Below are positions 9,221 through 52,117 of a stretch of 64,000 bases of DNA, piece by piece. Origin of the DNA: Trichoplax adhaerens (Eukaryota; Animalia; Placozoa); assembly GCF_000150275.1 (NCBI RefSeq), contig NW_002060943.1, forward strand, positions 12,042,522-12,106,521. The letters run 5' to 3'. How positions within the stretch are numbered: the stretch's first letter is position 1; the number at the start of each line of letters is the position of its first letter. The notes beneath the pieces are model-generated. The model searched no databases, was not told the DNA's origin, and saw only the letters and a program-made list of their open reading frames with translations. Position numbers and translations under genes: made by a program.

Positions 9221-9758
9221 ACAACTACCCTTGCGACACAAGGAAACAACGCAGTAATTATAATAAACTTTAAGTTAATCCGCAGAACTACTTCCCTAGC
9301 CTACGGTATAGTAACTGGAATCCTTGCGAACTACTAACTCGCTGAACACACTATGCGATATAAAACTAACGCAAAACTTAGCCTTAACATGAAAATCACT
9401 ATTTATTGATCACAGTCCTTCTTATATACTCTTTCAGTAGTTATAAACATGTTTACTATGCTACCAACATATTTCAATAACAAACATGTTATTACGATTG
9501 AATTATCAAATACGGACATTCGAGCTAATAAACAACTTCATACGTAAATCTACTTCGACTGCAAGCCCTGTCAAGCTCCTATGTTTTCGATATAAGTATC
9601 TTGTAACATATTTCTATATCATCATAATATCATAATAGCTTAGAATATAACTAACAATAATAATTCCTAAAGTAGTAGTTCATACTTCTAAAAAGTTCGA
9701 AACAAAATGTTATCATAAATTACACGTCCGTATCTAAGTTATTTTGATGACTGTGACA
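9221..9758 (-). repeat. Dispersed ~540 bp repeat, copy 1 of 3 (others: 31759-32294 inverted, 45881-46173 direct with internal deletion)
   Basis: Shared blocks ctacccttgcgacacaag, cctagcctacggt.tagtaactggaatc, cctaaagtagt.gttcatacttctaa, and a common end at ...gtgaca. The LRR-like reading lies on the minus strand in this copy. Confidence 0.9.
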
Positions 9759-10713
9759 ATAATGTAGCGTTAAATTGTAAACTCCGGTTAAATTCAAATT
9801 AAAAATTAATACCAATGAAATAAGCGATATTATAATATAGCAGTTAAATTTTGATATTAGTAGGTCAGCCCAAAGACTCAAAACTATTGATTACCGAAAT
9901 CACAATTTCTCAGTGTCAATCAGAATCTGTGCATGCATAGTAATAAACTTATTTTACTTATTATTGTATCATAGATAACAGTCTTATAACGATCGTTTCC
10001 TTGTTTGCTAGTTTGATGTTATTTTAATTAGCTTTGATTAAAATTTTTCTCAGCAGATGTTATTGAATTAAAATGATACAAAATGGCTCGTACGAGCTTA
10101 TACATTGGTACATAAAATTCTGAATACCGCAATAGTAAGATTTGTTCGTTTTGCTATTTTAAGATTTAGGATTGATGTTACTGGTACTGTCTTGTCTTGA
10201 CTAGATACGGTACTTGCATCGTTTGCTTGGACAACGACATCTTGGTAGAGATGAATATTTAAATATTGTAGTATCGGTACTGTCTTTATGTTAATTTCTT
10301 TGATTTTAAACACCGATGAATTAATTAATTAATCATTAGGCGACGATTGAAATTAAATGAAATTTTGTCCCAGTTCATGTTATAATTGATACTTTGGCAT
10401 TAAAACTGTTTAGCTTATTGCTTATTATTGTGCATCTTACGTTACGTTAACCGTAATTTCAGTATTTACGTACGTCTAGAGCTAGTTTTTATGCAAGCTT
10501 TTGGAAGTGTCCTACCAATATAGCATTGATTGCTAGAAGATTCTAGTACCAGGCAGACATAGAATTGGTACTGTCGGTAGTCTAATCATATTAGCTTTGC
10601 TCTACGTTTTCTGACAGGTCTATCAAATGGTAATACTATCTGTTAAATGAGCACATTATCGTAAACCGTCAGCAAAGCGACCGGAGTTTGCACTAGTATC
10701 TATAAAGCGCAGA

Positions 10714-19381: not shown

Positions 19382-20434
19382 ATGTTAAATTTATCTAGAC
19401 GAGATCGAAAATATGATATGAATAACTCTGCAAATAATGATACACCCGTAATAACTATATTTGCAATTTATCAATTTGCATCTGCTATTGCTATTCCAAT
19501 ATTTATCATTGGATTATTGCTTAATCTGTTTATGTTGTATATTTTCCTGGTCGATCGGCATTTTAAGACGACCACCTATACATTGATAGGTATATCAGTC
19601 GTATCAGATACTATATCAGTGTGCTCTATGTTAGTTGGTGTTTGCTTTATTAGTGATAGTAAGCTAGATTTTATTCGAGGACAATTGTTTTGTCGCTTAA
19701 CATTAATAATCATTTTCGCATCGTTCTTCGTATCAATGATGAATCTGTGCCTAATAGGAATAGATCGCTATTATTCAATTGTTAAACCCTTCTCAACGAA
19801 ATATAAGCTCCGTAAACCTTACATCATAGGAATAGCGGAATTTTTTTTTTGGCTACTAGCTATAGTAATTCATTTACCGTTGTACAAGTACGTATCAGTT
19901 TATCCACAAGATCCCTTATTATGCGATTTTCTAGTTATAACACCCTCAATATCGTCTTATTTAATAACGCACGCTGTAATTTCATTTGTAATACCTTCGA
20001 TTATTTTAGGTGTTGTATACGGTAAAATTGTTATATATCAAAAGTCTTACCGAAGACCAGGAAACGCTATCGATGGCCGACAGATAGAGAAGCAGTCGAG
20101 AATGAAACGAATAATAAAAGTATTAATTAGTATTTCGGTCTGCTATATCGCTTTGAGTTGGCCATTTTTTGCTTCCACCGTAGGAATGGCTATAACTAGT
20201 AAATCACTAATGGATTTACGTCAAGAAAGCTCTGCCCTTTTATTATTGGCTTATTTCTCTGTAATTATAACTTTATCAATTACAATTTTAAATCCGCTCA
20301 TTTACTTAAAATTCGATAACAATATACGGAAAAGATCACTGTTCTTACTTAATAAAATGAAACCAAGGCGATGTAGAGGACGCAGTCGCATTAACCCAAC
20401 CGAGTCATTTAGAAATGCATATAGAGTCAATTAA
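19382..20434 (+). CDS. Intronless rhodopsin-like (class A) GPCR, orphan; likely start ATG 19418 (MNNSANN, as in the 10714 paralog)
   Basis: GLLLN, VSDTIS, NLCLIGIDRY, W..HLP, FVIP..VYGKI, ALSWPFF, LNPLIYLKFD. Colinear with the 10714-11715 protein. Confidence 0.93.
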   Translation: MLNLSRRDRKYDMNNSANNDTPVITIFAIYQFASAIAIPIFIIGLLLNLFMLYIFLVDRHFKTTTYTLIGISVVSDTISVCSMLVGVCFISDSKLDFIRGQLFCRLTLIIIFASFFVSMMNLCLIGIDRYYSIVKPFSTKYKLRKPYIIGIAEFFFWLLAIVIHLPLYKYVSVYPQDPLLCDFLVITPSISSYLITHAVISFVIPSIILGVVYGKIVIYQKSYRRPGNAIDGRQIEKQSRMKRIIKVLISISVCYIALSWPFFASTVGMAITSKSLMDLRQESSALLLLAYFSVIITLSITILNPLIYLKFDNNIRKRSLFLLNKMKPRRCRGRSRINPTESFRNAYRVN

Positions 20435-21400: not shown

Positions 21401-24400
21401 AAACAATTCGAAGATCAATCTGGTACTTATTTTTATTTTCTGCAATTTCCTTTAAATATTTAATACTATTTTAAAATTGCTGCCTACGCAGCCTTTTAAT
21501 CACATCAAAACTTATGGAGTGATTTCGCTATTTTGGATCAGCGTTGCTCAGTAATTAATCTCATGACTTAATTTATTGCCTATGGTTACTCTCTATCGCA
21601 ATTCGTAAAGGAAATTAATATCCAGAAAAAAGTGAATTTATATCATACATCATCGACGTCAATGTAGTATAGAAACTTAATTTCGTGTGCTGTTTCTTCA
21701 TAAATTAAATAATCATCATATCCACTCCGACGTTAAAGGATTCTAATTTGTATTTCGTTTGAGGGTTTTATTTATCTATGAATACTTTGCTTATTAAACT
21801 GATTAGCGAGTAATTTTGAATTTGCAATGTGTATTGTTTATAAAGTAGAATACTAAGAGCTTTCAGTAATTATGATACTTGAATTACGATAATATTAATC
21901 TTAGAGGGCTTTGATGCCATTGATATCCTATTACGATATACATGATATTTTCGTAATTTTAAGAATATAAGTGATATGGCATCTAAACTATAGCGTAATG
22001 ACATAAAACAATAATACTATAAAAATTATTTGTACTAATTTCACACATTAAATTTATTCTATTAGGTATGTTTATCTTAAAGTCAACATTAGAGCAAAGT
22101 TATGAGATAGAGTGATATACTGGTTTCAATACAGCACATGCTTGGAGTTAGATTAAGCTATATAATACTATAGATGAAAACAGAAACAATACTAATAAAT
22201 TCGTATGTCACGAACTACTCTCCTGACAAGGGATAAAGTATAGTATTTTGTTCCTCTAAGTTGCTACTGTCAACTACTATTTTAGTTTCGGCCTAGAACT
22301 TCCCTTCTAGACTGTAGTTTCGCAAATAAACTTCACAACGTGGAGCTACTTTTACTTTATTTCAACTAATTCGAGCAATACGATGCACTCGTAAAAGACT
22401 ACAGAAATCATCTACTAACGAGCAATATTCGTAGTCACAAGTCAAATCATAAAAGCTTAGTTGACCTAATTTACATAGATAAAACTATAGAGAAAAACAC
22501 CTTTCTTTGTTCAAGAATAGATAAGAGAAAGAGATAAGGAGTCTCGAATTCCGTTAACAGACTCCCCACACAGTTCATTAAGATTAAACATACTAAGTGG
22601 TCTAACCGGCACGGAAAATAAGTAAATGACTCATTAGTGTAACATAATAGGAATGCCAGTTATTCGGCTTACAGTGCAAGGCTAAGAAAAGAACACACGA
22701 AACAATATACATTTATACTACTATAGGACTCCAATTGAGTCATAAACGAAAGAATAAATGATATCGAATTAATAATAAGTATGGAAATATACCAAAACAC
22801 AAATACTTAATTTATACCGTATCATTCACGGTGTAGTTGCACCGTGACATCATAGTATACGGCACTGTGTACTTGTGCACAAGTTCCTGACGTACCGATA
22901 TTTTAGTGGGATGAAATTGCAATTCGGCTTTATAACGTATGCTGATCTTGCTATTACCTGTACATCTTTTTAATTAAGTTAAGATTAATTTTATCTTGCA
23001 AATAGATGCATGTTAGCGAATGTAAGACAAATTTAATCGGTAAAGAAATGTAGCAGTCTTTTCCAACATAATCCTATCGCTGTCGAGCATTATTATTCCT
23101 TTAATCAATATAAACAAATTTAGTTCTTCAAATAAGCAGAATTTTTTATAATCAACTCTATTTTAAAGTTTATTTTAGCAGTAATAAATCAATATTTAAG
23201 CTTAAAGTGGCCTATTTATGCCTATGCATATTTGATACCATTAATTGCAGTGATCTCTAAAATGTTGTTTTTTTCGTATTTCGCTAAAAGCTGTCTTTAA
23301 TCATTCATACAAGCATTAGGATAATTCTAACGGTACTAGAATATGAGAAAATTTAATGTCTGATTAAATATTTGCTACCGGTTTTCTTGTTGGATAACGT
23401 CAATTACCTCTGAAAGCTTTAAGACTGCAGCAAATTCTGTCCAATCTTCGCCGATAGAATTTGCGATCCAATAGAAAGAAATTATGAGATCTAAGATACG
23501 AATAGATTGATTTGGAGTAACAAGCGAATTGGAGGTAATCGTTATCAATTTAGAAAGCTATTTACTGTATTGTTCTAAATGCTTCTTTTCGATCAGACTA
23601 TGAAATAAGCCAGCATATAATTGCATTTATAGTACCATGGAGTGACTAATTATACAACCGTACCGTAGATACAATATTTGTATGAGAGCTGATTTCGGTA
23701 TAAGTTAATTAGGTAATATTGTAATTGTCTTAAGGAGGTAAAATTTAGTACTTTTAGATATTTATATAATAAAACCATTTACTATGAGAAACAGAACATA
23801 ATAAATTGGACTATTGTACATTACAGCTGAGCTTCATTGAATCATTTTGATACTGATAGCAATAAAATCGGTAGCTGGCTCTATTATTTCATAATATTAT
23901 AAGGCAGACTATATGATTTTTATTGGTTTTAATATTAGCAGTACTGTACTCCGCATTTGATTAGCTGTGGTTTGGTAGCAAAGTTAAGATTGCGTTAAGA
24001 CTATGATTATGCTATAAAAATAGATATTTTATGTAGAATTTAACAACTATATTTAACGGACACAATTAGACGGTTGGAAGTTTATCGTTTACTTGATTGC
24101 TATCATGTATTGTGTGATTTTTGCTGTTGATCTAACAATGGAAAGTGAGCAGTTGCTGTTATTAAATTGACCAAAGGGGAGGATTGTCAGCTAATGTGCA
24201 TGTGCAAATGAATTACAATTGAATTAAATTATACTGTCCAATACTGTGAATGTGAAATGCTGTCTGTGAAAGATTGCAGGTTATTGGTATAGAAGTGGGT
24301 ATTTCTATTGGTTTTCCTATAAATTTAAAAAGAAAATATAGAATTCATTTCTAGCTAATAGATATCAGTCAAGTATTAATAGATAGTAATTGCGCATGAC

Positions 24401-25599: not shown

Positions 25600-26657
25600 A
25601 GTAACAAATGATTTCAAGACATACTTTCCTTCTTTTGTGCAAACAAGTCCTACTCGATGATAAGTATTTGGGCTTCGATGTAATTCTCGCTATTGACTGA
25701 TAAATTAATTTTAAGCGCATTCTAATGCATGGATTCTGCTTCACTATACTTGCCTTATTTCATATACATTGTTCCATAATTATTATATAGAGTAGCAATT
25801 TCAGGATGATTACTACTGAGAATTAGTAATTGAATTTTGAGCGATTTATCATTCATTGCAAGGACATGGCCATATTTGCCCTGCTTTTTGTAGATGACTC
25901 CAGTGCTGTTGTATGATTTTACAATGTCGAGACGTTTATTTCCAAAGACTAAAACTCGAATGTTTCAAAACATATTGCTAAATGAATGAGAGTCATCATA
26001 ATTACCTTGATCATAATATACATTTCCGATGTCGTTATATAATTGTGCAATTAAGGGATGCATTTTGAATAAGGCAGGTAGTTTAATTTTAACTTCTTGA
26101 TTATACTTTTGTTGTCTGTAATAGATAAGTCCTAATTTATAGTATGAACTTGCAGCATTGAGACTTTTCTCCCCATTGACAAATAATTTAATTCTCAGCG
26201 TCTTCTTGTGCATGTAAATAGCCTCACCATACTTACCTTGATTCATGTAGACTGTTCTAATGTTGTGATATAGCCCAGTTTCTTCAGGATGGTTAATACT
26301 GTAAATTGATTATTTAATTTGAGCGATTTGTTATATATTGCAAGAGCATCATTATTTACCTTACTGTTTGTAGATCACTCGGAGGTTGTTACATGGGGTT
26401 GCAGTATTGGGATGTTATTCTTCAAAAACCGATATTCGAATATCTCGAGACTTTATAAGTAAGGAAAGAGCATGTTTATAATTGCCTTGATCGAAATATA
26501 TAATTTTTATGTCGTTTAATGTTAGTGTAATAGTAGAATGCATTTCTCCTAAAATTGGTAATTCAATTTCGAGTAACTCTTGGTACATAGAAAGGGCTTG
26601 ATTATGCTTGCCTTGTTCCTAGTAGGTAAGTCCGATATTGTAATATGATTGCGCCAT
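25600..26657 (-). pseudogene. TPR-repeat (42-aa, kinesin-light-chain-like) pseudogene
   Basis: From 26657 it reads MAQSYYNIGLTY*EQGKHNQALSMY...FDQGNYKHALS...E*HPNTAT..NNL.VIYKQ*GK, with several in-frame stops and frameshifts. Includes ORF 25965-26246 (HPLIAQLYNDIGNVYYDQGNY). Lacks the N-terminal region shared by the intact paralogs. Confidence 0.88.
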
Positions 26658-30657: not shown

Positions 30658-30977
30658 TTACGAATCATTAGTGAAATTTCTAGCTTTAACTTCTAATTGC
30701 CTTCCTAGCTTTTGAACTCTTTGAATAGTATTATTATTTAATACATCACAAAATTCTAGGAAATCATTCCCATCAGCACGATTTTGTAAGATATTGAAAA
30801 GTCGATCTGCTTTTTGCTCTTCATGTGGAAGCCTTCTTATATCTGTTACTTCTCTTTCACTTAAAATATGCTTTGCTTTTAATTTGAGTAGTATTTCATC
30901 AGTAGGTATAATGCGAATGAAATCTTCATTATAATAGTTTAAGGCATGACACAGCTGTGGACGCGAAATTTCGTTAT
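30658..30977 (-). CDS. CARD-like (death-fold) terminal exon of the Roco gene, absent from the ORF track
   Basis: Acceptor tcttatttcctctag|. Reads DNEISRPQLCHALNYYNEDFIRIIPTDEILLKLKAKHILSEREVTDIRRLPHEEQKADRLFNILQNRADGNDFLEFCDVLNNNTIQRVQKLGRQLEVKARNFTNDS*. This fits the CARD pattern L..L...ILS..E...I......KA..L..IL..R....F..F...L. Confidence 0.8.
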
Positions 30978-33900
30978 CTAGAGGAAATAAGAGATTTTCT
31001 CAGAATAATAAAGATTTAATAAAGTGAATGCTTATTTTAAACACTCTAAATTGCAGAAAATGGCATCTACTATTCCTGGAAGATACACATTATTGATATA
31101 TTTTATTAATTCTATATTTATACTCCAAGTGGACGGCATGTACTATGAAAAATTTTGGTAAAGTATATAAATTTTAGCAAGCCTCAGCAGTATATTTTAC
31201 TGTGTTATTTACGCTATAATTGTCGTTCATGCCAGTATAAGCGTAGTAAAATATCTTCAAATATATACGGTTTATTCCGATGAAATTTAATAAAAGTATT
31301 TAAAAATTTAGCATTGTGTCTGCATAACGTAGTTTTTGCAAGTTATATTTGTAGAGTACTTCTACTGTTCTATTTGAATGTCTCATTCTCAACAGTTTTC
31401 ATTTACTATCTTTGAAAACGTAGTGGAAATGAAAGAATTTAAACCATTACATGTACAAATAATGAGAAAGTTATAGTGTACTTTCGATTTTTTAAAGTAT
31501 AAGGCGCAAGAAAAATTATGGTACGAAGTAAATTTAAAATAAAGTTAGTCCTGCGTCGCAGTATTGCATCTTCTATAGTCATTTGTAGCAACTTTTAATG
31601 CAAGCATATAAGGTTTAATTTACAACTTTATAAGATCTTACTGTTGTTGCTTGTTTGAGTATCCGACATTCGAAGCTTACCGTACCACCGATCTAAGCGA
31701 TATAAGTTTACAAAAAATGATTATGAGCATGTTCAAGATCGATTCCCTTAGAGCTAGTTGTCACAGTCATCAAAATAACTTAGATATGGATGAGTAGTTT
31801 GTGATAAAATTTTGTTTTGAACTTGTTAGAAGTATGAACTACTACTTTAGGAGTTGCAATTGTTAGTAATAAACTAAGTTTATTATGATATTATGACGCT
31901 ACAGTAATATGGTACAAGTAAGTACTGAGAATATAGGGGTTTGACAGGGCTTACAATCGAAGTAGATTTACGTATGAAATTTTTTATTACCTCGAATGTC
32001 CGTATTCGATAATTTAATCGCTATAACATATTTGTTGTTGAAATATGTTGATCGTATACTAAATATCTCTATAACGACTGAAAGAGCATATAGGTAGGAC
32101 TGTGATCAATTAAAAGTGGCTTAGATTAAGGCTAAAATGTGTGAGAGTTATATACCGTATATTGTGTTTAGCAAGTTAGTGTGTACTTCGCAAGGATTTC
32201 AATTGCTATACCGAAGGCTAGGGAAGTAGTTCTGTGAATTAAAGCAAAGTTTATTATAAGTGCTGTACTGTTTTCTTGTATCGCAAGGGTAGTTTTGATG
32301 CTAGTATTTACAGAATAAAAACTAAGGGAAATCAATGTATTTAGGCGTGTACACAACTGTGATATGATAATAAATATCATTGATATAAAAGGATAAGTGC
32401 CGTAATTTTATCATCAGGCTTGCTATAGACATTATATCCCTAATTCTAACATTAGCATACCTTTCCACAATTTCTTATCGTATGGTATCCAATCGCTAAT
32501 CGAGTTGCTTTCGAAATAATTATGGCAGTTCTGACATTGAATCCAATTTTGGATTTGTACATTGATTTTACATTTTACACTAGTTAATTTATTACAGTAG
32601 CTGCATTGAACATAGAATTGACAATTTTTATTTTTAAACTTTGGCATTCTTTCTTCTATTATCGATACTAATTTAGCCCTAATGATGGCATGGAGACGTT
32701 TACTATGTAAAGAATTAAAAACTTTGTCCATGATTTTATCTTCAATTTCAGATTCTCTTACTTTTTGATAGCAATATTGTAAACCGATGTAAGAGCCTTC
32801 TTTTTTGACAATAACGTAATGACCATCGTTTGCTAGATAATACTTTGCGCAATGATGATACAGTTCTACTTTAGTATTATTCCATTCCTTCATGCAGGCT
32901 GACAATAAACAATAATAGATTCCATCTGGGATATAAGGAATGTCCTTGTTCTCATATCCGATATAGAACCAATCTGATAAAAGATATCCTGTTAAATTAA
33001 ATGGATCAACATCGGAGCGTAGCAAGTATGGGGCAAAATATTTACTTTCATCTTCGTCATTATCATTTTTAATCTGGCATACTATATCATAAGTCTCCAT
33101 TAATTTCAGTATATTCTTCTTTGCATCTTCATCTAATTTTTGAAGAACATAATCAATGTAAGATCTTGATAACTTCCCTGTTTGGCTAGCCTTTTCATAC
33201 TCAGATATTATAGACGAGCTACCAGAAGGACATTCATGGCACTGGATAAGGCTACGAAATATTTTTAATAACCAATCAACATTTGTTACAACGATTCCTC
33301 CATAACCCGCTTTCTTGCAAAATATAATTTCTCCTAAATCATGTAAATAAGTCAGCATATCGATTAACTCTTCTTCATTCTCATATAAGCAGTACTTCTG
33401 AGCCAAATTAATTACTTCTTGTATGGTCATGATATTACTAATGCTATCAGTCCGAATTTGATTGATTTTTGAGGAAGTTGATGGATTGTCATGGCTGAAG
33501 GAGGCTACACGTAATATTGTTGCCATAATGATCCAACGTATAGGAATAGAACTCTTCATGAATGGTAACGATTGCGCAAATTTTTTAATTATGTGATGCA
33601 GACGAAAACTGCAATACGTCCGATTAATCTTGGTTGGTAGGCTATTGTCTTCAGCATTACAGTTAAAAACGATACCTGAAGAATAGATATTGTTTTTATA
33701 GATTGGCATATGCGATCTTATTTCACGCTCAAATTGATTAAATCGACGGATACGTTCTTCTTCTTTTAATATTAAATCGCCATGCGATGCGACTAAGATA
33801 ACGATGGGCAACGAATACTTAACATTATCATTGTCAATATTCGCTGTAATCTCACCACCATCTCTATGACTACCGATGATAGACGTCAACCATTCTTGCA

Positions 33901-36657
33901 TGGCGTGTAAATAAGTTGTGTTCAGTAATTGACCATCTCGCGTCCGTACTTTGTCATAAATATCAAGGGCAATATTGAATACAAGAATATATATACTGTT
34001 TTCGGACATGAATAGACGATGAGTAATATGGTAAATTTCATGACCGCCGAAATCCCATATTTTAGCATATTGGCTATCGTAGTCCAAGTAATTCTTTTTC
34101 ATTGGTGGCAGAGAAAAATAATATTGGAAGACATCTCGTAATTGTTGCATGCTTGATTTAGAATTCATTGTCTCTAAATCTTTTGAAGCAATGGGATCTT
34201 GTTTATCAGTTTCATATGTGAAATCGATAGATCCAGTGTCAGCTATAGTTTGGCGATAAACTGAACCAGCTGATACTTGAGTCGTGCTATCATTGTTGAA
34301 TGTTTGCATAATGGAATTTATATTAACTCTCCAAATTTGGCGTAAATCATCAAGCTGAAGATTTTGTAAATTATATGCTATTTCGATTACTGTTTCAGAT
34401 TGATGGACAATCTCCGTAGGAGGTTGATTTGGTTTAAGTACTTGTCGAGTAAACGCCCTCATGATAGATGATTTACCAACATTTCGTGGGCCAGTAAACA
34501 TAGCTCTTACTAAATTATTAAAGCAGCTCCCTCGGTCTAAAGCTTTGATATATCCACGAAAATATCGCTTTTCTTGAATATCAGTAACTGAAAGGAGAAA
34601 ATTATCAAGAGGCTTATTCAGCTTTGAAAGTTAATCAATGATTAGAAGAAGAATCTGTGATCAATACAAACCAGGAATGAATTATTAAATTTTACCTCGA
34701 TTATTGGCCCAATCTTGTTCGTTGCTGTGGTTTTCGCTGTCACTTGACCGCAATTGTGATTGATTATCTTAATTATTGTTGAATATTACATTAATGTAGA
34801 TTAATTTAAATATATATCAATTTCATGATGCTCTTGCATAATACAGAATAGGTAATGTTTGATTTTTAAACTGTACTTACTTAGAAATTGTGGCTTATGG
34901 TGATCTTGTCCTCGGCTTTTCCTTTTATTTACTTCTTCTTTTAATATATATGTTTACGAGTATATATAATTAATTATTAGTTTACAAATAGCGGAAAAAA
35001 TCTATTACTTAACTTTCAGCTAATTAGTCTTAATCATTAAGGTAAAGAAATTAGGAGAAGATAGAGAACCTTGTATTTTTCCTGATTGATTAGTTAATGA
35101 CTCAGAGATATTCATTTCTTGAGGTAAACAATTGCGAATAGTTTCTGATTTTTGTTGCATGGCAATAGCATCGTCAAAGTGATGTAAATGATTGTTACAT
35201 CCTGCTAGTTTTTCATATATATCAGCAATACTAGAATGATTTTCTCCAAAAGTTTTATGCAAAATATTTAGTGCTTCATTATATTTAGTAAGGGCCTGAT
35301 TATACTTTAATTGTTTGTAATACGAATTCCCCATGTCTTGATATAGCTGTGAAATATCGGGATGAGTATCGCCTAAGACTAATAATAAAATTTTAAGTGA
35401 TTTTTGATACATTGAAAGAGCTTCATCGCACCTGTTTTGATGATCATAAATATTTGCTATATTTTTATAGGATGCAGCGATACTAGGATGATTTTCATCT
35501 AGTTGTGCTAATCGTATTTTAAGGGACTTTTCATGCATAGATAGAGATTTGTCGTATTGTCCTTGATGTTCATAGACAACTCCCAAGTCTTCATAATTAT
35601 TAGCAACATATTGATGATTTTCACTATAGACCGATAATTGAATTTTGAGCGATTTGTTATGCATTGTTAAAGCATCATCATATTTACCCAATGAATCGTA
35701 AACATTTCCAATATCATGATATATCGGCGAAAGGTCAGGATGATCGTTGGCCAGAATTGATAAGTAAATTTTAAGTGATTTAAGATACTGGGAGAGGCAA
35801 TCATTAAGTCTTCCTTTCTTCTTGTATGCTACACCCATGCTAAGATAAGATGCTGCAACAGACGAGCGATTTTCTCCAAAGACTAATAGTCGAGCTTCAA
35901 GACATTTTTTAAATATAGCAAGAGCCTTATCATATTTGCCTTGACGTAAGTAGATATTTCCAATATTGTTATATGACTCGTCAACTATGGCATGATTATC
36001 ACCTAAATGATGGGATTCAATTTCGAATGACTTCTGATACATGGAAAGAGCATCATTATACTTGCCTTGTTGCTCATAGATAAGCCCCTTATTATGGTAT
36101 ACCCGAGAAATGTCAGGATGATTATCATCAAGTATTGATAGCTTGATTTCGAGTGATTTGTCATACATAGCGAGAGCTTCATAATTTTCTCCTTGTTTCC
36201 ACTTAACTAGTCCGATGTTATTATACGAATCACTGATATTTAGATTTTTCTCTCCTAGAGAAGTTAACTTTATTTCTAAAGCTTTATGAAAATCGTGTAA
36301 TGCTCCATTTAAATCGCCTTGTAATCTTTTGATACTTCCTTGTCTATCCCAGCAATTAGCGATGCAGACCTGGTCTTGTAGTTCATTTGCTACCTGTTGC
36401 GCTAGGTTGCAAAATTCGTAGGCTTTTGTCCAAATGCGTTCACGTCTGTAAATATCACTAATGTCTATGTAAATATTACACTTAAGTCGTTCAACATCAG
36501 CAGAGGAATTGGGTATTATTTCAATTTTATGTAGAGATTCCATATAGGAAGGAAGCGCATTTTTAAAGTCAAATTTTGTTTTACTCTCTTTAGCCATTTC
36601 AAATAGAGACTGAATATTTTGGGGAACAGTAGACTCCGTAGGTTGTTCTGTAGCCAT
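30658..36657 (-). CDS. Multi-exon Roco protein: N-terminal TPR array - linker - Roc GTPase - COR - CxxC/CxxC segment - C-terminal CARD (~1390-1404 aa)
   Basis: Hand-built exons (minus): 36657-35070 TPR; 34937-34881 EEVNKRKSRGQDHHKPQFL; 34767-34696 NQSQLRSS..WANNR; 34587-32461 Roc-COR; optional 31692-31642 or 31692-31681; 30977-30658 CARD to TAA. All introns are GT-AG and phase 1, and the joined frame has no stop. Roc motifs: YIKALDRG..RAMFTGPRNVGKSS, IWDFGG, VASHGD. COR motifs: IPIRW, LTYLHDLGEII, VDWL, YFAPYLL, PDGIY. The first donor (GTTCTC) is the weakest link. Confidence 0.8.
31759..32294 (+). repeat. Dispersed repeat copy 2 (inverted relative to 9221-9758), inside a Roco intron; LRR-like relic
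   Basis: Reverse-complement match along the whole of copy 1. The plus frame from 31996 reads MSVFDNLIAITYLLLKYVDRILNISITTERAYR*DCDQLKVA*IKAKMCESYIPYIVFSKLV. Confidence 0.9.
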
Positions 36658-40579: not shown

Positions 40580-42865
40580 CTGAGACCAGAAGGGAAGGCA
40601 TTTTCTTACATTGACTACTTTCTATTTCATTTCCGTTCATATCGTCATTATCGTAAGCAATAACATCTGCAAATGGATAATAGAGATTGTAATTGAGCAA
40701 AACTAAATAATCCCAAGCACTCTATGCAATCAAAGCCTCTTGATATTTTGGTCAATTACTACTTTTATATTCACGCTGTCATTTGAAAACAAATTATCAC
40801 TGACTAGTATGATTAATAAAATAGCTATAGAATTGCAGAATTTTAACATGATACAATTAACAGACTAGATTCGTACAGCATTCTAATTTTTTCAATTCAA
40901 GAATACTTTATTAAGGGTTCTAAAAAAATAATGATTTCAAGTCATTATAATTGCTGAATATCTGCCGGAACTACCAATCTAGACAATTTACTATTGATCA
41001 ATATTTCTTTTATAACTAGTAAGCGGTATTTTAAATAGTTATCATAATTTTCTTAGTAATTATCATTCTCCACAAGATATTTGTTAATATAGAGCATGTA
41101 ATTATTACGCAAACTATAAAATCATCGAATTAATTCAGTACTAATAACTGTAATGGCCGAATTTAGATGGTGCGTTGATATCACATGACAGGACTAACTT
41201 TTTAAAGTTATATTTAAACTAAAAATATAGAACATTTTTAATTTTTAGTTCATTTTTAGTAATGAGTTAAACTGCAAAGATTTAATCATTCTAACTCGAA
41301 AATAGCGAAGATGCAGAGTTCATAACTTAATTTCCAAGCGCTACCTACCCGACACAGCTGTGCTATTGCGATCCGATTCTCGATTAGTTCGTATACTATC
41401 TGTAAACGATACGAAAAGTAAATATTGAATTAATATTAGGGATTCTACGACCATAACTCAACTATATCATGGCATTACCGATGTCTTGATTTTCTTGGCT
41501 AGTATCATCGAGACCGTCATCACTGATTGCGTTGGGCCTTGGGGATATATTAATATTTGCTTCATTTTTTCGGAAAAACTTTTTAAAGACTTTAGTACCC
41601 TTTCTATTCGATTTTTTGATGTTTTCGTAAGCAGATTGCAGATCACGGCGTGCTAATTCAATATTGCTAAAGGTTCCAGAAACGCTTGCATGATTATCGC
41701 CAAATAATGGCAAATTAATGTTTAATGATCTTTCAAACATACAAACGGCCTCATCGTACCGACCTTGTTTATGATAGATAAGTCCTACATTGTTATATGA
41801 TGTAGCAACTTCAGGATGATTATCACCAAAGATCGATAATCGAATTTTAAGGGCTTGATCTAACATAGAAAGAGCCTCACCAAATTTGTTTTGATTGCAG
41901 TATACGACTCCTATGTTGTTATATGATTGAGCAACATCAGAATGGCAATTGCCAAGGACCATAGATCGAATTCTTAGTGAGTTATCGTACATGCAAAGAG
42001 CCTTTCCATAATTGCCTTGGCAGCAGTATACACTTCCAATATTGTTATAAATGGTAGCTATATCCGGGTGATGATCACCAAGCATCGATAGCTGAATATT
42101 GAGTGATTTATCATATAGTAAAAGTGCCTCATCAAGTTTACCTTGGTTCTTATAAACGCTTGCCAAGTTATTGTATGTTGTAGCGACATGGGGATGGTTT
42201 TCACCTACGGCAGATATTCGAATTTTCAGAGATTTATCATACATAGAAAGGGCCTTGTTGTATTTGCCTTGTTTTTTATAAATACTTCCTATGTTATTGT
42301 ATAATGTAGCAGTATCAGAATGATTATCACCAAGGCTTGAAGAGTAAATTTTAAGTGATTTCTCGTAAGCAGATAGAGCGGCAACAAATTTGCCTTGGCT
42401 TTCGTAAACGATTCCGATTTGATTATATGAGTGAGCAATATGTAAACTATTGCTCTCCAGCCATTTCAGTTTTATTTCCAACGATTTTTTATAGTCATCT
42501 AAAGCACCATTTAAATCGGCCTGCAATCTTTTGATGTTACCTTGTCTATCAAGACATCGTGCTTTATTGACTTTCTTCTGTGATGTATTAGCCAGTTGTA
42601 GTCCCATCTGGCTGAATTCGTTTGCTTTGACCCATTCACGCTGGCGTACATAAATATCACAGATATTGAGATTAACATCGTATCGAATTCGATCTATATC
42701 ATTTTCATTATTGGGCGTGGATTTTAGTTCATCGAGTACTTGTTTAAAACAAGAAAGGGCTTCTTGATGTCTGTATTCTTGCTTGTGTTTTTGGCCCATC
42801 TTGCATAAGGAGGTTACATGTTTTTGATTAATAGGCCTTGAAGTTTGATTACGATAAGCAAACAT
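40580..42865 (-). CDS. TPR-repeat protein (42-aa repeats), paralog of the Roco N-terminal exon; at least two exons; 3' end unresolved
   Basis: ORF 41462-42865 with repeated HP.VA..YNN.G.VY..QGK...AL..Y..SL.I units and the shared motif CLDRQGNIKRLQADLNGAL. Phase-1 donor ATC G|GTAATG at 41479/41478. In-frame exon 40666-40580 (ccatttgcag| DVIAYDNDDMNGNEIESSQCKKMPSLLVS |gtacgt). Confidence 0.85.
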
Positions 42866-48123: not shown

Positions 48124-49770
48124 TTATTGACAGATATCATTATCAAGTCTAGGGCAAATGCTGTTATTGTCCGATGGTTTATTTATTTCCGTATCATTTC
48201 TTTTAAATAACCAAACTAGGTTGTTAAGCGCTCTTCTTGTTGTCGCTTTAGCCTGACTATACCAAGATTGTTGAGCTAAACGTACATCATTGATGTAATT
48301 TTTCGTAAATATTGCATCGGATAGGCCATTGCTAATATGAGTAAGTGATACTTGAATTGTCAGAGCATTCTCAAACATAGAAATGGCCTCATTATACAGA
48401 CACTGATGATAGTAAACCAGTCCGATGTTATTGTACGCTTGTGCAATTTCGAGATGGTTATCGCCGAGGACTGATCGTTTAATTTGAAGTAGCTTTTTAA
48501 ACACATCAACAGCTCGATCATACTGTCTTAAATTATATCGGATAATTCCAATCTTGTCGTATAGATTTGCGATATCAAGATGATAAAAATTAAGAACCAT
48601 CAATCGGATGTTCAAAGCATCATGAAACATAGAAAGGGCCTTATTATTTTGACCTTGAGTAAGATATACATTTCCCATATGATAAAATGTATTTGCATCG
48701 TGAAGGTTCTCCAAACTATTAATTGACCAATGCCTGATACTGCTCGCTGTCTCATGGCTAGAAAGAGCCATATCATAATTTCCCAAATTACGGTAGACAA
48801 TTCCAAGACAGTCATATGAATTAGCAACGTGAGGATTATAACAGTCAAGAGCCAGTGAGCGAATTTTAAGCGCTATTTTATGCATAGACAGAGCTTTGTT
48901 ATACTTACCTTGATCATCATATACATTTCCCATTTTACTATATAAATAGGCGACATCAGGATGGTCATTATCAAGAAATAATAACTTGGCATTAAGTGAT
49001 TTTTCGTACATCGCTAGAGCTTCATCATATCTCTTTAATCTATAATAGATCTTACCAATGTTGATATAGATGAAAGATTGTTTAATATCCGGATAATTAT
49101 CATCGAGTAGCAATAAATAGATTTCAAGCGACTTTTCAAACAATTCAAGAGCCTTATCGTCTTTTCCTTGTGTCTTCTTGACTACGGCTAAGTTGTAATA
49201 AGATTGTGCAACATCCGTATGTTGATCATCAAGGATTGATAATCGAATTTGAAGAGATTTATTATAGTTAGAGACAGCATCTTCATATCTACCTTGTTTG
49301 AAATTAACAAGTCCAATTTGATTGTATGAATGGCTAATATCGAACTTTAAATTTTCACTTTCTGCCGATTTGATATTCAAACGTATGTCTAGCGATTCAT
49401 TATAGCAACGGAATGCACCTCTTAGAGAACCTTTTAATAATAATATCTCACCTATTCTGTCTATACTTTGTGCTGTTTTGACATAATCTTGTAGTCTATT
49501 AGCCATTTCTTCTGCCTTATTACCAAATTCATAAGCCTTATCCCATTCCCCAGTTTTTATATAAATATCACAAATGTGAAGGTAAATATTAAATTTTAAA
49601 CGATTAATATCCGCTGAATAATAAGCGATTAACTCGGCTTCATAGAGAGCCTGCACATAATAGCGTAGTGCTTCCTTGAAATTGCAAAGCTTGTCGTGAT
49701 GTTGTCCTGATTCATACTGGGATTGTATTTGTTGAGGAATAATCGGCTTGACGGAATTATTGATATCCAT
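48124..49770 (-). CDS. TPR-repeat protein (42-aa repeats), paralog of the other TPR loci; first ATG at 49770; probably truncated by a late nonsense change
   Basis: ORF 48124-49839 (the track uses a TTG start; ATG MDINNSVKP is at 49770). Repeated TPR units and the shared N-terminal region. TAA at 48126-48124 lies just upstream of an in-frame phase-1 donor AAA G|GTAAGC (48114/48113). Confidence 0.87.
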   Translation of the reverse strand: MDINNSVKPIIPQQIQSQYESGQHHDKLCNFKEALRYYVQALYEAELIAYYSADINRLKFNIYLHICDIYIKTGEWDKAYEFGNKAEEMANRLQDYVKTAQSIDRIGEILLLKGSLRGAFRCYNESLDIRLNIKSAESENLKFDISHSYNQIGLVNFKQGRYEDAVSNYNKSLQIRLSILDDQHTDVAQSYYNLAVVKKTQGKDDKALELFEKSLEIYLLLLDDNYPDIKQSFIYINIGKIYYRLKRYDEALAMYEKSLNAKLLFLDNDHPDVAYLYSKMGNVYDDQGKYNKALSMHKIALKIRSLALDCYNPHVANSYDCLGIVYRNLGNYDMALSSHETASSIRHWSINSLENLHDANTFYHMGNVYLTQGQNNKALSMFHDALNIRLMVLNFYHLDIANLYDKIGIIRYNLRQYDRAVDVFKKLLQIKRSVLGDNHLEIAQAYNNIGLVYYHQCLYNEAISMFENALTIQVSLTHISNGLSDAIFTKNYINDVRLAQQSWYSQAKATTRRALNNLVWLFKRNDTEINKPSDNNSICPRLDNDICQ

Positions 49771-52117
49771 TTTTTTTCTAAAATAGCTGCTATCAGTCGA
49801 TGATTTGCTGGACCACTTGCTCTTAGAAAGCAAATTCAAATTTCATGTCGGAAAAATTACTTGTAATAATGGGACGGCGAAATTATGACGTCTTCTATCA
49901 AAATCATTTCTACAGCTTCAGCTTTGATTAACGATTTAGATATGACTACGTGATTTTATAATTTGATATTTACATTATTCAATGCGATATTAGCTTTTTG
50001 TCTTTTTGCTGTACAAGAAAAAGTTCAATTTTTAAATCGAGAAATTCATTAGATTACACTCTCTGCTACCTTTTGAAATTTGTAACTTATTTCACAAGTA
50101 CCGTATTCATTATATCGATGATGTATTTCTTGTGTGCCATCCTTTATACCGAACTAAATAGTATTGTAACTTGTGAATAACAACTTTTATTCTATTCAAT
50201 ATTTTTGTCATAGACATAAGTCTGTAAAAATTATCATTTCTCTTTTCCTAGTAAAGGCTACATTTTTCTTTGATAGTTGATATACGGTAGTTGATGATTT
50301 ATCACCTTTGACATCAATCTACATTATTACGTGCCTTTTCAAACACGACGATCATAAACTAAAAGATTACATACTATTGAAGAATAATAAGGTCCACCAT
50401 TTTATATTTTGTCGCATATTATAATAATTACTCGTCAAGAATTATCATGACATTAACATAAATTAGCGTTTTGAATTTAGCCTAGAGCAACATCTTTTAA
50501 GTCTAGATAAGCCAATAATAAAGTCTTCAGGGCTTTCAGTAAATAATGCTTTGCTTAGATAAAAGTAATGACTAATATCAATTGATTATCAGCACAATTC
50601 TTCTATTTTGTGTTTTTGTTAATACGCGTAAATAGTATACATTTAATGTTTGCTTTTATTCAATTTGAGAAAGACTATTTCAATATATTCATGATACAAT
50701 TACTATTGGCGATCTTTATACTGGACGTAAAATGATGTAACCATTTTCCAGAATAAAAACTTTATTCATTGAATATAAAGACTGACAAATCATTAGCCCA
50801 CATTCTATTTCCCATACCTAACAAAAAATTTTATTGTAGTGACGTGAGTTTAGTACTTAAGTTAAATTCTTAATTAAGTATAGAATTACTAATATACGCT
50901 ACCGTAGGCTATGATACTTGCGTAGATTAATGCGATTAGTCGCTCTTGCCCGGTAAAATATGGTAATTCAATGCCCGTGCTTAACGTGTGGAAGCGTGAT
51001 AATGTTACTTAATACCGTTACTAGATAGGTCATGCGCTAGGATTTATAAGCTTATGCAATGAATAGATCGAGAGTTCTTCTTGTTCATAGTTGGTTGTAA
51101 ATACAGTTACGGTTGGTTTCTATTGTAATAAAACTTAATTCGTGGTTTAAATCCAGTTAGACTGATTTATTGTGGCCCTTAAAAATCGACTAATTACAGT
51201 GATTTTGTTATGTCATTGCAATAAATCTGTTCTTTCTAATTTCCAATATTTCTAATCCAAAACGATTTGTAGTCAACAGTTTATTACGGGGTTCTCGTTA
51301 ACGAAAGTCTTCTATTACAAGCTATAATCTCAAGTACGAAAAACAATCTCTAATGAGTCACCTTGATTACTTATATCTTAGCCTGTTTACAATCCGAAGA
51401 TCATAAACAGGAATAACTGAATAACATCTATTAACCTCTAGACTAAGTATAAGAACGAAATTATATGATTACTGTAGTTATATACGAAACTTAAACTGAA
51501 ACATCCTTTGTACTAACAACAAGACCGTACTTGTTATTGCTAGCTCTACAAGTTGTCAACAGTATTATAATCTACACAATAACACAATATCATTACAATT
51601 ACATCTGCCAATCTAAAGTTCCCCAGCTAAGCTTGTTGGTATATCCTAGTATACACAATATTAAAAAAAATTTAGCACAGTTTATCGTTCATATTTCTCA
51701 CAACAGAACATAGATAATAAGCTGTAAGAGCCGAAACGAATGCTGAAGGCATTAAAATATGTAGTGGTAAACTAGTTTTGGTTAGATGATCTTAGCCTAA
51801 TTAATCTCTCCTTCTATCTTCATACCACAGTCGACATAAACACTATCGATTTTTATATCCCTTTATCCGTAGCATGGGCATATTAATTGTACAATACTTC
51901 CTTTCTCTTTTATATCCGTTTGATAGCAAAAATTTTTTTAATATTGCGGGATAATACAGTTTAGAATGAAGTAGCTGCATTGAAGCTCATTAGGTTTACT
52001 TCAATTATCTACGTAGAAAATATGACAAAATATCATCTATGCCGAAAGCGGAATCATACTGCTAAAATTAGGTCTTTAATATGTTAATGATTTAGATATA
52101 ATGAAAGAAAATCTTAT

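What the first reader, a model, noticed from the sequence alone, without database searches (positions are those of the whole stretch)
30658..36657. Hidden TPR-Roc-COR-CARD gene: an NLR/Apaf-1-like layout built on a Roco GTPase
Seen: the TPR ORF, two small linker exons, the Roc-COR ORF and an unlisted CARD-like exon join through phase-1 GT-AG introns into one stop-free frame of ~1400 aa. Established: Roc-COR is a dimerising GTPase module (LRRK2, DAPK1, MASL1); CARDs recruit caspases or adaptors homotypically; TPR arrays are binding surfaces. Inference: this is a sensor-switch-effector protein analogous to NLRs/Apaf-1, with a GTPase instead of NACHT/NB-ARC, no kinase, and the CARD at the C-terminus, so a candidate intracellular immune or cell-death receptor. 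I recall an expanded Roco family being reported in placozoans, so novelty of this exact architecture needs checking.
Basis: partly seen in the sequence, partly recalled or inferred. Interest (0 to 1): 0.88.

Follow-up and report, generated by a model that had tools for sequence, protein, structure and literature searches.

The report
Known placozoan TPR-Roco-CARD gene
This is a real, transcribed six-exon Trichoplax gene encoding a TPR sensor array, a Roc-COR GTPase switch and a C-terminal CARD, but it has been in public databases since 2008 and belongs to a placozoan Roco family already described in print.

Summary
Six minus-strand exons join through GT-AG, phase-1 introns into a 1404-aa frame. 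Every junction appears in spliced contigs of public runs; one run is on record as RNA. The small exon between Roc-COR and CARD is 51 nt (31692..31642).

The gene is not hidden. The exons tile exactly onto TRIADDRAFT_52746 (XP_002109080.1, UniProt B3RK79, 1404 aa). Trichoplax sp. H2 has an ortholog, RDD40856.1, misnamed "Nephrocystin-3".

The domains are real:
- TPR_12 scores 8e-89.
- Roc and COR-A pass the Pfam cut-offs, and the model matches LRRK2, LRRK1 and CtRoco (7e-16).
- The last exon misses the Pfam CARD cut-off alone (23.7 vs 23.9 bits). However, 16 of 23 aligned family members, this exon included, hit CARD. The model (pLDDT 95) matches Apaf-1 CARD (TM up to 0.89).

Civiero et al. 2014 (PMC4104024) reported at least 17 T. 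adhaerens ROCO genes carrying CARD, death and TPR domains.

New here:
- The genome gives 72 Roc-COR matches, about 40 of them long.
- The closest paralogs end in a Death domain, so the CARD looks like an exon swap.
- A CxxC...CxxC motif follows COR.
- A sea-anemone relative has Roc-COR fused to a caspase.

The NLR/apoptosome-like function remains inference. Two first-stage notes on other pieces of this genome gave a similar reading.

The parts
35070..36657 (-). Exon 1: start codon (36657) and the N-terminal TPR array (residues 1-529 plus the first base of a split codon)
   Evidence: ORF. Pfam TPR_12 8.4e-89, TPR_10 1.9e-57, TPR_NPHP3 1.4e-51. In-frame TAA 12 nt upstream. Donor at 35070/35069 used in X5 and X10 contigs.
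34881..34937 (-). Exon 2: 57-nt basic linker exon, phase 1-1
   Evidence: AG/GT flanks. Both junctions in X5 and X10 contigs. Tiles P0151 residues 531-548.
34696..34767 (-). Exon 3: 72-nt linker exon, phase 1-1
   Evidence: AG/GT flanks. Both junctions in X5 and X10 contigs. Tiles P0151 residues 550-572.
32461..34587 (-). Exon 4: whole Roc-COR module plus a C-terminal Cys4 motif (P0151 residues 574-1281)
   Evidence: Pfam COR-A 4.9e-13 (49.6 vs 35.3 bits) and Roc 1.3e-11 (45.2 vs 27). AF2 model pLDDT 79.8, pTM 0.84. Foldseek hits LRRK2, LRRK1 and CtRoco Roc-COR at 7e-16 to 1e-8.
33551..34528 (-). Roc GTPase domain (about exon-4 residues 20-345). G1 is GPRNVGKS, G3 is DFGGH, G4 is SHGD. Low-confidence insertions lie between G1 and G3.
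   Evidence: Motifs read in alignment A2. Segments with pLDDT below 50 at residues 49-67 and 100-141. The domain limits are my estimate from the model's secondary structure.
32636..33550 (-). COR-A and COR-B (about exon-4 residues 346-650)
   Evidence: Pfam COR-A covers residues 376-522. Structural matches to COR of CtRoco (3dpt, 3dpu) and LRRK1/2. The domain limits are my estimate.
32501..32623 (-). CxxC...CxxC motif after COR-B (about exon-4 residues 655-695), followed by a conserved S..DW motif; probably a zinc ribbon
   Evidence: The four Cys align in most placozoan paralogs of A2. Short beta-strands 655-692 in the model. Weak Pfam Zn_ribbon_Elf1 hit, 0.015, below cut-off. Metal binding is inferred.
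31642..31692 (-). Exon 5: 51-nt linker exon between Roc-COR and CARD, phase 1-1
   Evidence: Junction 32461/31692 in X5 and junction 31642/30977 in X5 and X6. Tiles P0151 residues 1283-1298.
30658..30977 (-). Exon 6: CARD (P0151 residues 1300-1404) and TAA stop (30660-30658)
   Evidence: Pfam CARD 5e-05, 23.7 bits vs cut-off 23.9. 16 of the 23 members of alignment A1 (this exon plus 22 paralog exons) hit Pfam CARD, best 4.7e-12. The family profile hits CED-3 (residues 2-85, 6.9e-05) and, more weakly, BCL10, RAIDD and Apaf-1 CARD entries. AF2 pLDDT 95.2, with helix breaks consistent with six helices and a kinked H1. Foldseek top hits are nearly all CARDs, Apaf-1 CARD TM 0.78/0.86-0.89, rmsd 1.3 A.
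31759..32260 (.). Dispersed ~500-bp repeat inside intron 4 (not coding)
   Evidence: 41 matches in the genome including this copy, the others at 77-86% identity. Very deep coverage and loose ends at 31758/31759 in X1.

Best explanation
The locus is the annotated Trichoplax adhaerens gene TRIADDRAFT_52746. It is a six-exon, transcribed gene for a 1404-aa protein laid out as TPR array, two short linkers, Roc GTPase, COR-A/COR-B, a Cys4 motif, a linker and a CARD.

It belongs to a large placozoan Roco family. The genome gives 72 Roc-COR matches, about 40 of them long. In this family a TPR sensor and a Roc-COR switch are joined to interchangeable death-fold effector exons. Its closest paralogs end in a Death domain, and this gene carries a CARD in the same phase-1 terminal position.

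Shown: the gene structure, its transcription and splicing, the domain identities and the family context.

Inferred mechanism:
1. The TPR array binds a ligand or partner and probably holds the protein off.
2. Nucleotide state of Roc changes COR-mediated self-association, as in CtRoco and LRRK2.
3. This brings the C-terminal CARDs together or exposes them.
4. The CARDs recruit a CARD-bearing caspase or adaptor homotypically, starting a cell-death or immune signal.

The protein therefore works like Apaf-1 or an NLR but on a GTPase core. In layout it is closest to DAPK1 (Roc-COR followed by a C-terminal death-fold domain), without the kinase.
For: - Gene structure and splicing. Exact tiling on the public 1404-aa protein and its H2 ortholog, which differs at 10 residues, none in the CARD.
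- TPR, Roc and COR profiles above cut-off. The Roc-COR model matches LRRK2, LRRK1 and CtRoco.
- G1 and G3 are present and G4 keeps its Asp (GPRNVGKS, DFGGH, SHGD).
- CARD identity.
- Family size: 72 Roc-COR matches and 53 CARD-like exon matches in the genome.
- The closest paralogs are TPR-Roc-COR-Death.
- The three proteins with a C-terminal CARD fall in three separate Roc-COR clades. This one is nested, with 100% SH-aLRT support, in a clade of 10 rows of which 6 carry a C-terminal Death domain.
- The terminal death-fold exon has a phase-1 acceptor in this gene and in all six paralogs checked.
- Link to caspases: Exaiptasia XP_020902336.1, a relative at about 30% identity (its cluster representative KXJ13106.1 scored 4.8e-24), is HEPN_DZIP3-AAA-Roc-COR-Peptidase_C14.
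- Roc-COR-Death proteins occur in echinoderms, amphioxus, a brachiopod and a scallop.
- Established knowledge: COR-B mediates dimerisation, and CtRoco cycles between a GTP-bound monomer and a nucleotide-free dimer (PMC6337361). CARDs act by homotypic association.
Against: - No experiment on this protein or any paralog was found. No paper names its accessions.
- No CARD partner was identified. The CARD-family profile finds nothing at the caspase loci, and the C1408 caspases are short caspase-7-like models.
- The position equivalent to Ras Q61 is His in this clade (DFGGH) and G4 is SHGD, so GTPase kinetics may be unusual.
- Roco proteins are known as dimers rather than wheel-shaped oligomers, so the apoptosome analogy may fail in stoichiometry.
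- Kamm et al. 2019 did not list Roco genes in the placozoan immune repertoire.
- The CARD score of this exon alone is just under the Pfam cut-off.
Confidence: 0.6

Rival explanations
1. The CARD does not recruit a caspase. It couples this Roco protein to other CARD-bearing receptors or adaptors, such as Apaf-1-like NB-ARC paralogs or a BCL10/MALT1-type module. The protein would then work as a sensor or helper in a receptor network, or in NF-kB-type signalling, rather than as an apoptosome-like caspase platform.
For: - The CARD-like exon family has 53 matches in the genome. Several lie next to NB-ARC exons, for example C1411:7.88 Mb, whose CARD is 37% identical to this one.
- The family profile also hits BCL10 CARD.
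- A locus with a caspase-family (Peptidase_C14) match, a nearby Death-domain match and an immunoglobulin-like stretch lies at C1412:5.38 Mb. I read it as MALT1-like by eye, without a test.
- No CARD-caspase partner could be defined.
Against: - The best sequence-profile hit is the CED-3 caspase prodomain, and the best fold hit is Apaf-1 CARD.
- A cnidarian relative fuses Roc-COR directly to a caspase domain.
- Kamm et al. 2019 report two CARD-caspase genes in Trichoplax sp. H2.
Confidence: 0.2
2. It is a non-immune TPR scaffold of the nephrocystin-3 or kinesin-light-chain type, as the Trichoplax sp. H2 annotation names it. It would act in ciliary or transport processes, with Roc-COR as a general regulatory GTPase.
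For: The H2 ortholog and paralogs are named Nephrocystin-3 or Kinesin light chain. Pfam TPR_NPHP3 matches the TPR array at 1.4e-51.
Against: The names follow from TPR similarity only. To my knowledge neither nephrocystin-3 nor kinesin light chain has Roc-COR or a death-fold domain. Here the TPR array is joined to Roc-COR and a CARD, and in paralogs to Death domains. The gene belongs to a lineage-specific expansion with pseudogenised copies nearby, which is typical of conflict-type families and not of housekeeping scaffolds.
Confidence: 0.05
3. It is a transcribed but functionally decaying duplicate: one of many recent copies, on the way to the pseudogene state seen a few kb downstream.
For: A decayed TPR array with many in-frame stops and a Death remnant with four stops lie 4-7 kb downstream on the same strand. 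Several family matches in the genome contain stops. The catalytic-position residue is His rather than Gln.
Against: The 1404-codon frame is intact in both T. adhaerens and Trichoplax sp. H2, with only 10 amino-acid differences. All five introns are spliced correctly in contigs from three studies. The G1, G3 and G4 motifs and the four Cys are kept, and DFGGH is shared by the whole intact clade.
Confidence: 0.07

Closest known systems
Trichoplax adhaerens ROCO family (Civiero et al. 2014, PMC4104024), e.g. paralogs TRIADDRAFT_61714 and RDD45494.1
   Same: Same genome and same Roc-COR family (44-53% identity over the 708-aa module). Same TPR-Roc-COR layout with a terminal death-fold exon entered in phase 1. 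The review already lists CARD, death, TPR, LRR and AAA domains around Roc-COR.
   Different: The closest paralogs end in a Death domain, and this gene ends in a CARD. The review counted at least 17 genes, whereas six-frame searching gives 72 matches, about 40 of them long. I could not check whether this particular gene is drawn in its Figure 1.
DAPK1 (death-associated protein kinase 1)
   Same: An animal Roco protein with a repeat array N-terminal to Roc-COR and a death-fold domain at the C-terminus, linked to cell death.
   Different: DAPK1 has a Ca/calmodulin-regulated kinase domain and ankyrin repeats, and ends in a Death domain. This protein has no kinase, has TPRs in place of ankyrin repeats, and ends in a CARD.
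Apaf-1 / CED-4 and NLRs (STAND NTPases)
   Same: Three-part logic of repeat sensor, nucleotide switch and death-fold effector. The predicted CARD is closest in fold to Apaf-1 CARD. Placozoan NLR-like genes also use TPR or WD40 repeats with CARD or death-like domains (PMC6321704).
   Different: The switch is a Ras-like Roc GTPase with COR, not a NACHT or NB-ARC AAA+ ATPase. The domain order is inverted (sensor N-terminal, CARD C-terminal). The expected assembly is a dimer rather than a ring.
LRR-Roc-COR proteins (MFHAS1/MASL1, Chlorobium tepidum Roco, LRRK1/2 core)
   Same: The Roc-COR tandem has the same predicted fold, with a repeat domain N-terminal to Roc.
   Different: TPR replaces LRR. 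The Roc domain carries large insertions between G1 and G3. A Cys4 motif follows COR-B. A CARD effector is present, with no kinase or WD40.
Exaiptasia diaphana XP_020902336.1 (HEPN_DZIP3-AAA-Roc-COR-caspase)
   Same: The Roc-COR module is related (about 30% identity; its cluster representative KXJ13106.1 scored 4.8e-24), and the C-terminal effector belongs to the caspase pathway.
   Different: The caspase domain is fused directly instead of being recruited through a CARD. The N-terminus is HEPN plus AAA rather than TPR.
Bacterial AP-GTPase (Roc-COR) conflict systems (Kaur et al. 2021, PMC8195603)
   Same: Variable repeat sensor plus Roc-COR plus a variable C-terminal effector, interpreted as an immunity or cell-death system.
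   Different: Those systems are prokaryotic and LRR-based, with about 24 unrelated effector domains. Here the gene is metazoan and TPR-based, with death-fold adaptors.

Membership tests
Roco proteins | A Ras-like Roc GTPase domain with G1, G3 and G4 motifs | tested here: met
   Pfam Roc 45.2 bits vs cut-off 27. GPRNVGKS, DFGGH and SHGD in alignment A2. His replaces the usual Gln after DxxG, and Ser-His replaces Asn/Thr-Lys in G4.
Roco proteins | A COR domain directly C-terminal to Roc (the Roc-COR tandem) | tested here: met
   Pfam COR-A 49.6 bits vs 35.3. The AF2 model matches LRRK2, LRRK1 and CtRoco Roc-COR, E 7e-16 to 1e-8.
Roco proteins | Guanine-nucleotide binding and hydrolysis, and COR-mediated dimerisation | not testable with these tools
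   Needs purified protein. A homodimer prediction of the COR part gave no verdict and is not evidence either way.
CARD (death-fold superfamily) | Sequence match to the CARD profile | tested here: inconclusive
   This exon alone scores 23.7 bits vs cut-off 23.9. Within the full protein it scores 17.5 bits. However, 16 of the 23 members of alignment A1 (this exon included) match CARD, best 4.7e-12. The family profile hits CED-3 at 6.9e-05 and, more weakly, BCL10, RAIDD and Apaf-1 CARD entries.
CARD (death-fold superfamily) | Six-helix antiparallel bundle with a kinked first helix | tested here: met
   AF2 pLDDT 95.2. DSSP helices at 5-14, 16-22, 25-34, 40-47, 52-66, 69-80 and 85-100; I read the first two as a kinked H1. 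Foldseek top hits are nearly all CARDs, Apaf-1 CARD TM 0.78/0.86-0.89 at rmsd 1.3 A, although Foldseek E-values are weak (at least 0.019) for so small a domain. This is a predicted, not a solved, structure.
CARD (death-fold superfamily) | Homotypic CARD-CARD binding to a partner | not tested
   No stored sequence of a Trichoplax CARD-caspase could be obtained. Needs a pull-down or two-hybrid assay.
NLR / Apaf-1 (STAND NTPases) | A central NACHT or NB-ARC AAA+ NTPase domain | tested here: not met
   No NACHT or NB-ARC hit in P0151. The only STAND-named hit is nSTAND_NTPase4 at 19.9 bits, below cut-off, inside the CARD exon. The protein is an analogue, not a member. A paralog, P0018, does combine Death, NB-ARC and Roc-COR.
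DAPK1 orthologs | N-terminal Ser/Thr kinase domain, ankyrin repeats and a C-terminal Death domain around Roc-COR | tested here: not met
   No kinase or ankyrin hit. TPR replaces the repeats and CARD replaces Death.
Nephrocystin-3 (the name given to the H2 ortholog) | Overall NPHP3 architecture beyond the TPR region | tested here: not met
   Only the TPR region matches (TPR_NPHP3). The rest of the protein is Roc-COR and CARD. That NPHP3 lacks these domains is from my own knowledge.

The most novel reading that the evidence does not exclude
The placozoan TPR-Roc-COR-death-fold genes may form a GTPase-based counterpart of the NLR/apoptosome system. In this reading, nucleotide-gated COR dimerisation brings two CARDs or Death domains together and activates initiator caspases by induced proximity. 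Effector exons would be swapped between receptors by phase-1 exon shuffling. The sea-anemone Roc-COR-caspase fusion and the Roc-COR-Death proteins of echinoderms, amphioxus, a brachiopod and a scallop would then be remnants of an old, overlooked animal cell-death and immune receptor class.
Probability: 0.3. Interest if true: 0.7.

Novelty: already known. Interest (0 to 1): 0.33.

Why it matters
The gene itself adds nothing to the catalogue. It is annotated, and its family has been described. Three points still matter:

- Public domain annotation misses the CARD, and the H2 ortholog carries a misleading name. The placozoan immunity survey (PMC6321704) mentions neither Roc nor GTPases.
- The family is larger than reported, and its members exchange Death and CARD effector exons. 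That pattern fits a receptor repertoire under diversification.
- Relatives in other phyla tie this Roc-COR clade to death domains and, in one case, directly to a caspase.

If the inferred mechanism is right, animals would have a second nucleotide-switch receptor class beside the STAND NTPases. That would also bear on what the Roc-COR module of DAPK1 and LRRK2 originally did. It can be tested with ordinary biochemistry on a small, culturable animal.

Tried and rejected
1. A 12-nt micro-exon (31692..31681) also keeps the frame open. I rejected it because the contigs use the donor at 31642/31641, giving a 51-nt exon.

2. I considered that the Death-domain remnant at window 23252-23476 might be the former last exon of this gene. 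I rejected that reading. The remnant lies downstream of its own decayed TPR array (25695-26615, many in-frame stops), with no Roc-COR remnant detected between them. It is therefore the relic of a separate neighbouring paralog.

3. CARD-caspase partner. The CARD-family profile finds nothing significant at the caspase loci on C1408, C1402 and C1412. The C1408 caspases have public models of only 296 aa, caspase-7-like. A possible CARD upstream of one of them is split by an intron, so it has no reference. The pairing was therefore not tested.

4. Complex prediction on two copies of the COR-A/COR-B/Cys4 part returned 'no answer' (score 0.00). This is no evidence for or against dimerisation.

5. A sequence search of the Roc-COR part against solved structures gave only short switch-II matches. 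The fold comparison was needed.

6. Searches that found nothing: papers naming the accessions, supplementary files of the 2014 review, and scan notes near this place.

7. Joined spliced model. Exons were searched one by one by reference. Full-length work used the stored public protein P0151, shown to be identical exon by exon. The script joined the exons only to count length and stops, and printed no sequence.

Full report
**What is there**

The window is AT-rich (about 27-36% GC around the gene). It maps to contig C1414 of a 105.6-Mb, 1414-contig genome. Cluster look-up of the encoded protein names the organism as Trichoplax adhaerens.

On the minus strand there are two long ORFs, 545 aa (TPR) and 689 aa (Roc-COR). 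All introns are phase 1.

The exons are:

| Exon | Coordinates (minus strand) | Content |
|---|---|---|
| E1 | 36657..35070 | TPR array, start codon |
| E2 | 34937..34881 | 57-nt linker |
| E3 | 34767..34696 | 72-nt linker |
| E4 | 34587..32461 | Roc-COR |
| E5 | 31692..31642 | 51-nt linker |
| E6 | 30977..30658 | CARD, stop |

An in-frame TAA lies 12 nt upstream of the ATG at 36657, so the frame starts there unless an upstream exon splices in.

**Transcript evidence**

Sixteen public runs hold the stretch or part of it. I laid four of them, from four studies, on 30658-36657.

- X1 covers the introns and looks genomic.
- X5, X6 and X10 give spliced contigs. X10 is on record as RNA.
- Junctions 35070/34937, 34881/34767 and 34696/34587 are in X5 and X10.
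- Junction 32461/31692 is in X5. Junction 31642/30977 is in X5 and X6.
- All skipped segments end CT..AC on the plus strand, which is GT..AG on the minus strand.
- A 2477-nt X5 contig joins E4, E5 and E6 and runs about 326 nt past the stop. A 604-nt X5 contig joins E4, E3, E2 and E1.

TPR, Roc-COR and CARD are therefore linked in spliced contigs. These are assembled contigs, not single molecules, so one continuous isoform still needs long reads.

The small exon is 51 nt. A 12-nt alternative that also keeps the frame is not used.

**Not hidden**

An exhaustive HMMER search with exon 4 found a 1404-aa protein at 99% identity, with the match at residues 574-1281.

Its cluster holds RDD40856.1 of Trichoplax sp. 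H2 (named "Nephrocystin-3"). It also holds TRIADDRAFT_52746 / XP_002109080.1 / UniProt B3RK79 ("COR domain-containing protein"), seen on a contig of 13,260,704 bases, the length of C1414.

The in-frame translation of each of the six exons is an exact substring of that protein. The exons tile it with one split codon at each junction. The two species differ at 10 residues, none of them in the CARD.

The joined model was sent to no search tool. Exons were searched by reference, and the stored public protein P0151 served for full-length work.

**Domains**

- **TPR.** TPR_12 scores 8.4e-89, and other TPR families match.
- **Roc-COR.** COR-A scores 49.6 bits against a cut-off of 35.3, and Roc 45.2 against 27. 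Sequence matches to solved Roco structures are short and weak. An AF2 model built on 28 family sequences (pLDDT 79.8, pTM 0.84) matches LRRK2, LRRK1 and Chlorobium tepidum Roc-COR at E 7e-16 to 1e-8.
- **GTPase motifs.** G1 is GPRNVGKS and G3 is DFGGH. The His, in place of the family's usual Gln, is shared by this clade. G4 is SHGD. Two low-confidence insertions lie between G1 and G3.
- **Cys4 motif.** After COR-B there is a CxxC...CxxC motif, aligned in most placozoan paralogs and modelled as short strands. It is probably a zinc ribbon.
- **CARD.** The last exon alone scores 23.7 bits against Pfam CARD, just under the 23.9 cut-off. Within the full protein it scores only 17.5. That explains why the precomputed Pfam list for the H2 ortholog lacks CARD. 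The call is nevertheless secure, for these reasons:
  - The exon has 53 matches in the genome, itself included.
  - 16 of the 23 aligned family members, this exon included, hit Pfam CARD, best 4.7e-12.
  - A profile of the family hits CED-3 at its N-terminal residues 2-85 (6.9e-05), then BCL10, RAIDD and Apaf-1 CARD entries more weakly.
  - The AF2 model has pLDDT 95.2, with helix breaks I read as six helices and a kinked first helix.
  - Its Foldseek hits are nearly all CARDs, led by Apaf-1 CARD (TM 0.78/0.86-0.89, rmsd 1.3 A). E-values are weak, as expected for so small a helical domain.
- **Absent.** No kinase, NACHT or NB-ARC is present.

**Family context**

The Roc-COR exon has 72 matches in the genome, about 40 of them long. 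All strong protein relatives are placozoan.

The seven closest paralog loci (47-53% identity) that I examined have a TPR exon directly upstream. About 1 kb downstream they have a small exon that is a Death domain, not a CARD.

Other arrangements also occur:
- Death-Roc-COR-CARD (RDD40155.1; C1414:12.75 Mb)
- CARD directly upstream of Roc-COR (C1372)
- CARD-Death-AAA-Roc-COR-Death (TRIADDRAFT_59581)
- Death-NB-ARC-Roc-COR (P0018)

In a quick maximum-likelihood tree of the Roc-COR module, the three proteins with a C-terminal CARD fall in three separate clades. This gene is nested, with 100% SH-aLRT support, in a clade of 10 rows of which 6 carry a C-terminal Death domain. That tree is the quick search only, with no bootstrap. 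Rows without a C-terminal tail are truncated models.

The nearest relative of this CARD (48%) belongs to the Death-Roc-COR-CARD gene, whose Roc-COR is only 40% identical. The terminal death-fold exon is entered in phase 1 in this gene and in all six paralogs checked.

The simplest reading is exchange of effector exons between family members by exon shuffling. That is inference.

**Relatives elsewhere**

At 24-30% identity, Roc-COR-Death proteins occur in several phyla:
- a brittle star (Amphiura)
- a sea urchin (Diadema)
- amphioxus, with an N-terminal OTU domain
- a brachiopod (Lingula)
- a scallop (Mizuhopecten)

In the sea anemone Exaiptasia, a relative is HEPN_DZIP3-AAA-Roc-COR fused directly to a caspase domain. 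This fusion is the best indirect evidence here that the clade feeds into caspases.

**Literature**

- Civiero et al. 2014 (PMC4104024) report at least 17 T. adhaerens ROCO genes whose Roc-COR is surrounded by CARD, death, TPR, LRR and AAA domains. I could not see their Figure 1 or any accession list.
- A 2024 paper repeats this (PMC11378527).
- Kamm et al. 2019 (PMC6321704) describe placozoan NLR-like and Apaf-1-like genes and two CARD-caspases. The paper does not mention Roc or GTPases.
- ROCO domains combined with TIR and Death domains are reported in Aplysia (PMC9334734).
- Sensor-Roc-COR-effector "AP-GTPase" systems are described as bacterial conflict systems (PMC8195603).
- No paper names this gene's accessions.

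**Mechanism**

Shown: the architecture and its transcription.

Inferred, from established properties of the parts:
1. The TPR array binds a ligand or partner.
2. The Roc nucleotide state alters COR-mediated self-association. COR-B is the dimer interface, and CtRoco is monomeric with GTP and dimeric without nucleotide (PMC6337361).
3. The paired or exposed CARDs recruit a CARD protein.

Initiator caspases are activated by induced dimerisation (my own knowledge). A dimerising GTPase would therefore suit that task, and the anemone fusion fits this picture. The trigger, the partner and the output are unknown.

The layout is closest to DAPK1 without the kinase. The logic is that of Apaf-1 or an NLR, but the protein is not a STAND NTPase.

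**Verdict**

Two first-stage notes on other pieces of this genome give similar readings.

Noticed in passing
window 23252-23548 and 25695-26615, minus strand: Relic of a neighbouring paralog, 4-7 kb downstream of the gene. It has a TPR array with many in-frame stops and a Death domain with four stops. No Roc-COR remnant was detected between them.
   Followed up: partly
window 41462-42865 and 48124-49839, minus strand: Two intact ORFs (467 and 571 aa) whose N-terminal region and TPR array are about 40% identical to exon 1 of this gene. Each ends in a stop, and no Roc-COR follows within the window. They may be TPR-only relatives or first exons of other genes.
   Followed up: partly
window 31759-32260 (intron 4) and window 9258-9759: A ~500-bp dispersed repeat with 41 genome matches, this copy included, the others at 77-86% identity. 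It is probably a non-autonomous transposable element. Its type was not determined.
   Followed up: partly
window 19382-20434, plus strand: A 350-aa ORF that looks by eye like a seven-transmembrane receptor. It was not searched.
   Followed up: no
P0018 (1343 aa, placozoan-family relative; organism not looked up): Death, NB-ARC, APAF1 helical domain and Roc-COR in one protein. A STAND ATPase and a Roco GTPase are fused in a single predicted receptor.
   Followed up: partly
P0171 = XP_020902336.1, Exaiptasia diaphana (1429 aa): HEPN_DZIP3, AAA, Roc, COR-A and a full caspase domain in one protein. Another member of the same 90% cluster is annotated 'Caspase-8'. I did not check whether this fusion has been described.
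   Followed up: partly
G000:C1404:1.70-1.81 Mb and C1391:0.65-0.71 Mb: Dense clusters in which CARD-like, Death and Roc-COR exons alternate on one strand. They look like tandem arrays of this family.
   Followed up: no
Trichoplax sp. H2 proteins RDD40856.1, RDD45494.1, RDD43187.1 and others: Roco-family proteins are named 'Nephrocystin-3' or 'Kinesin light chain' in the H2 annotation. The names derive from the TPR region only and are misleading.
   Followed up: yes
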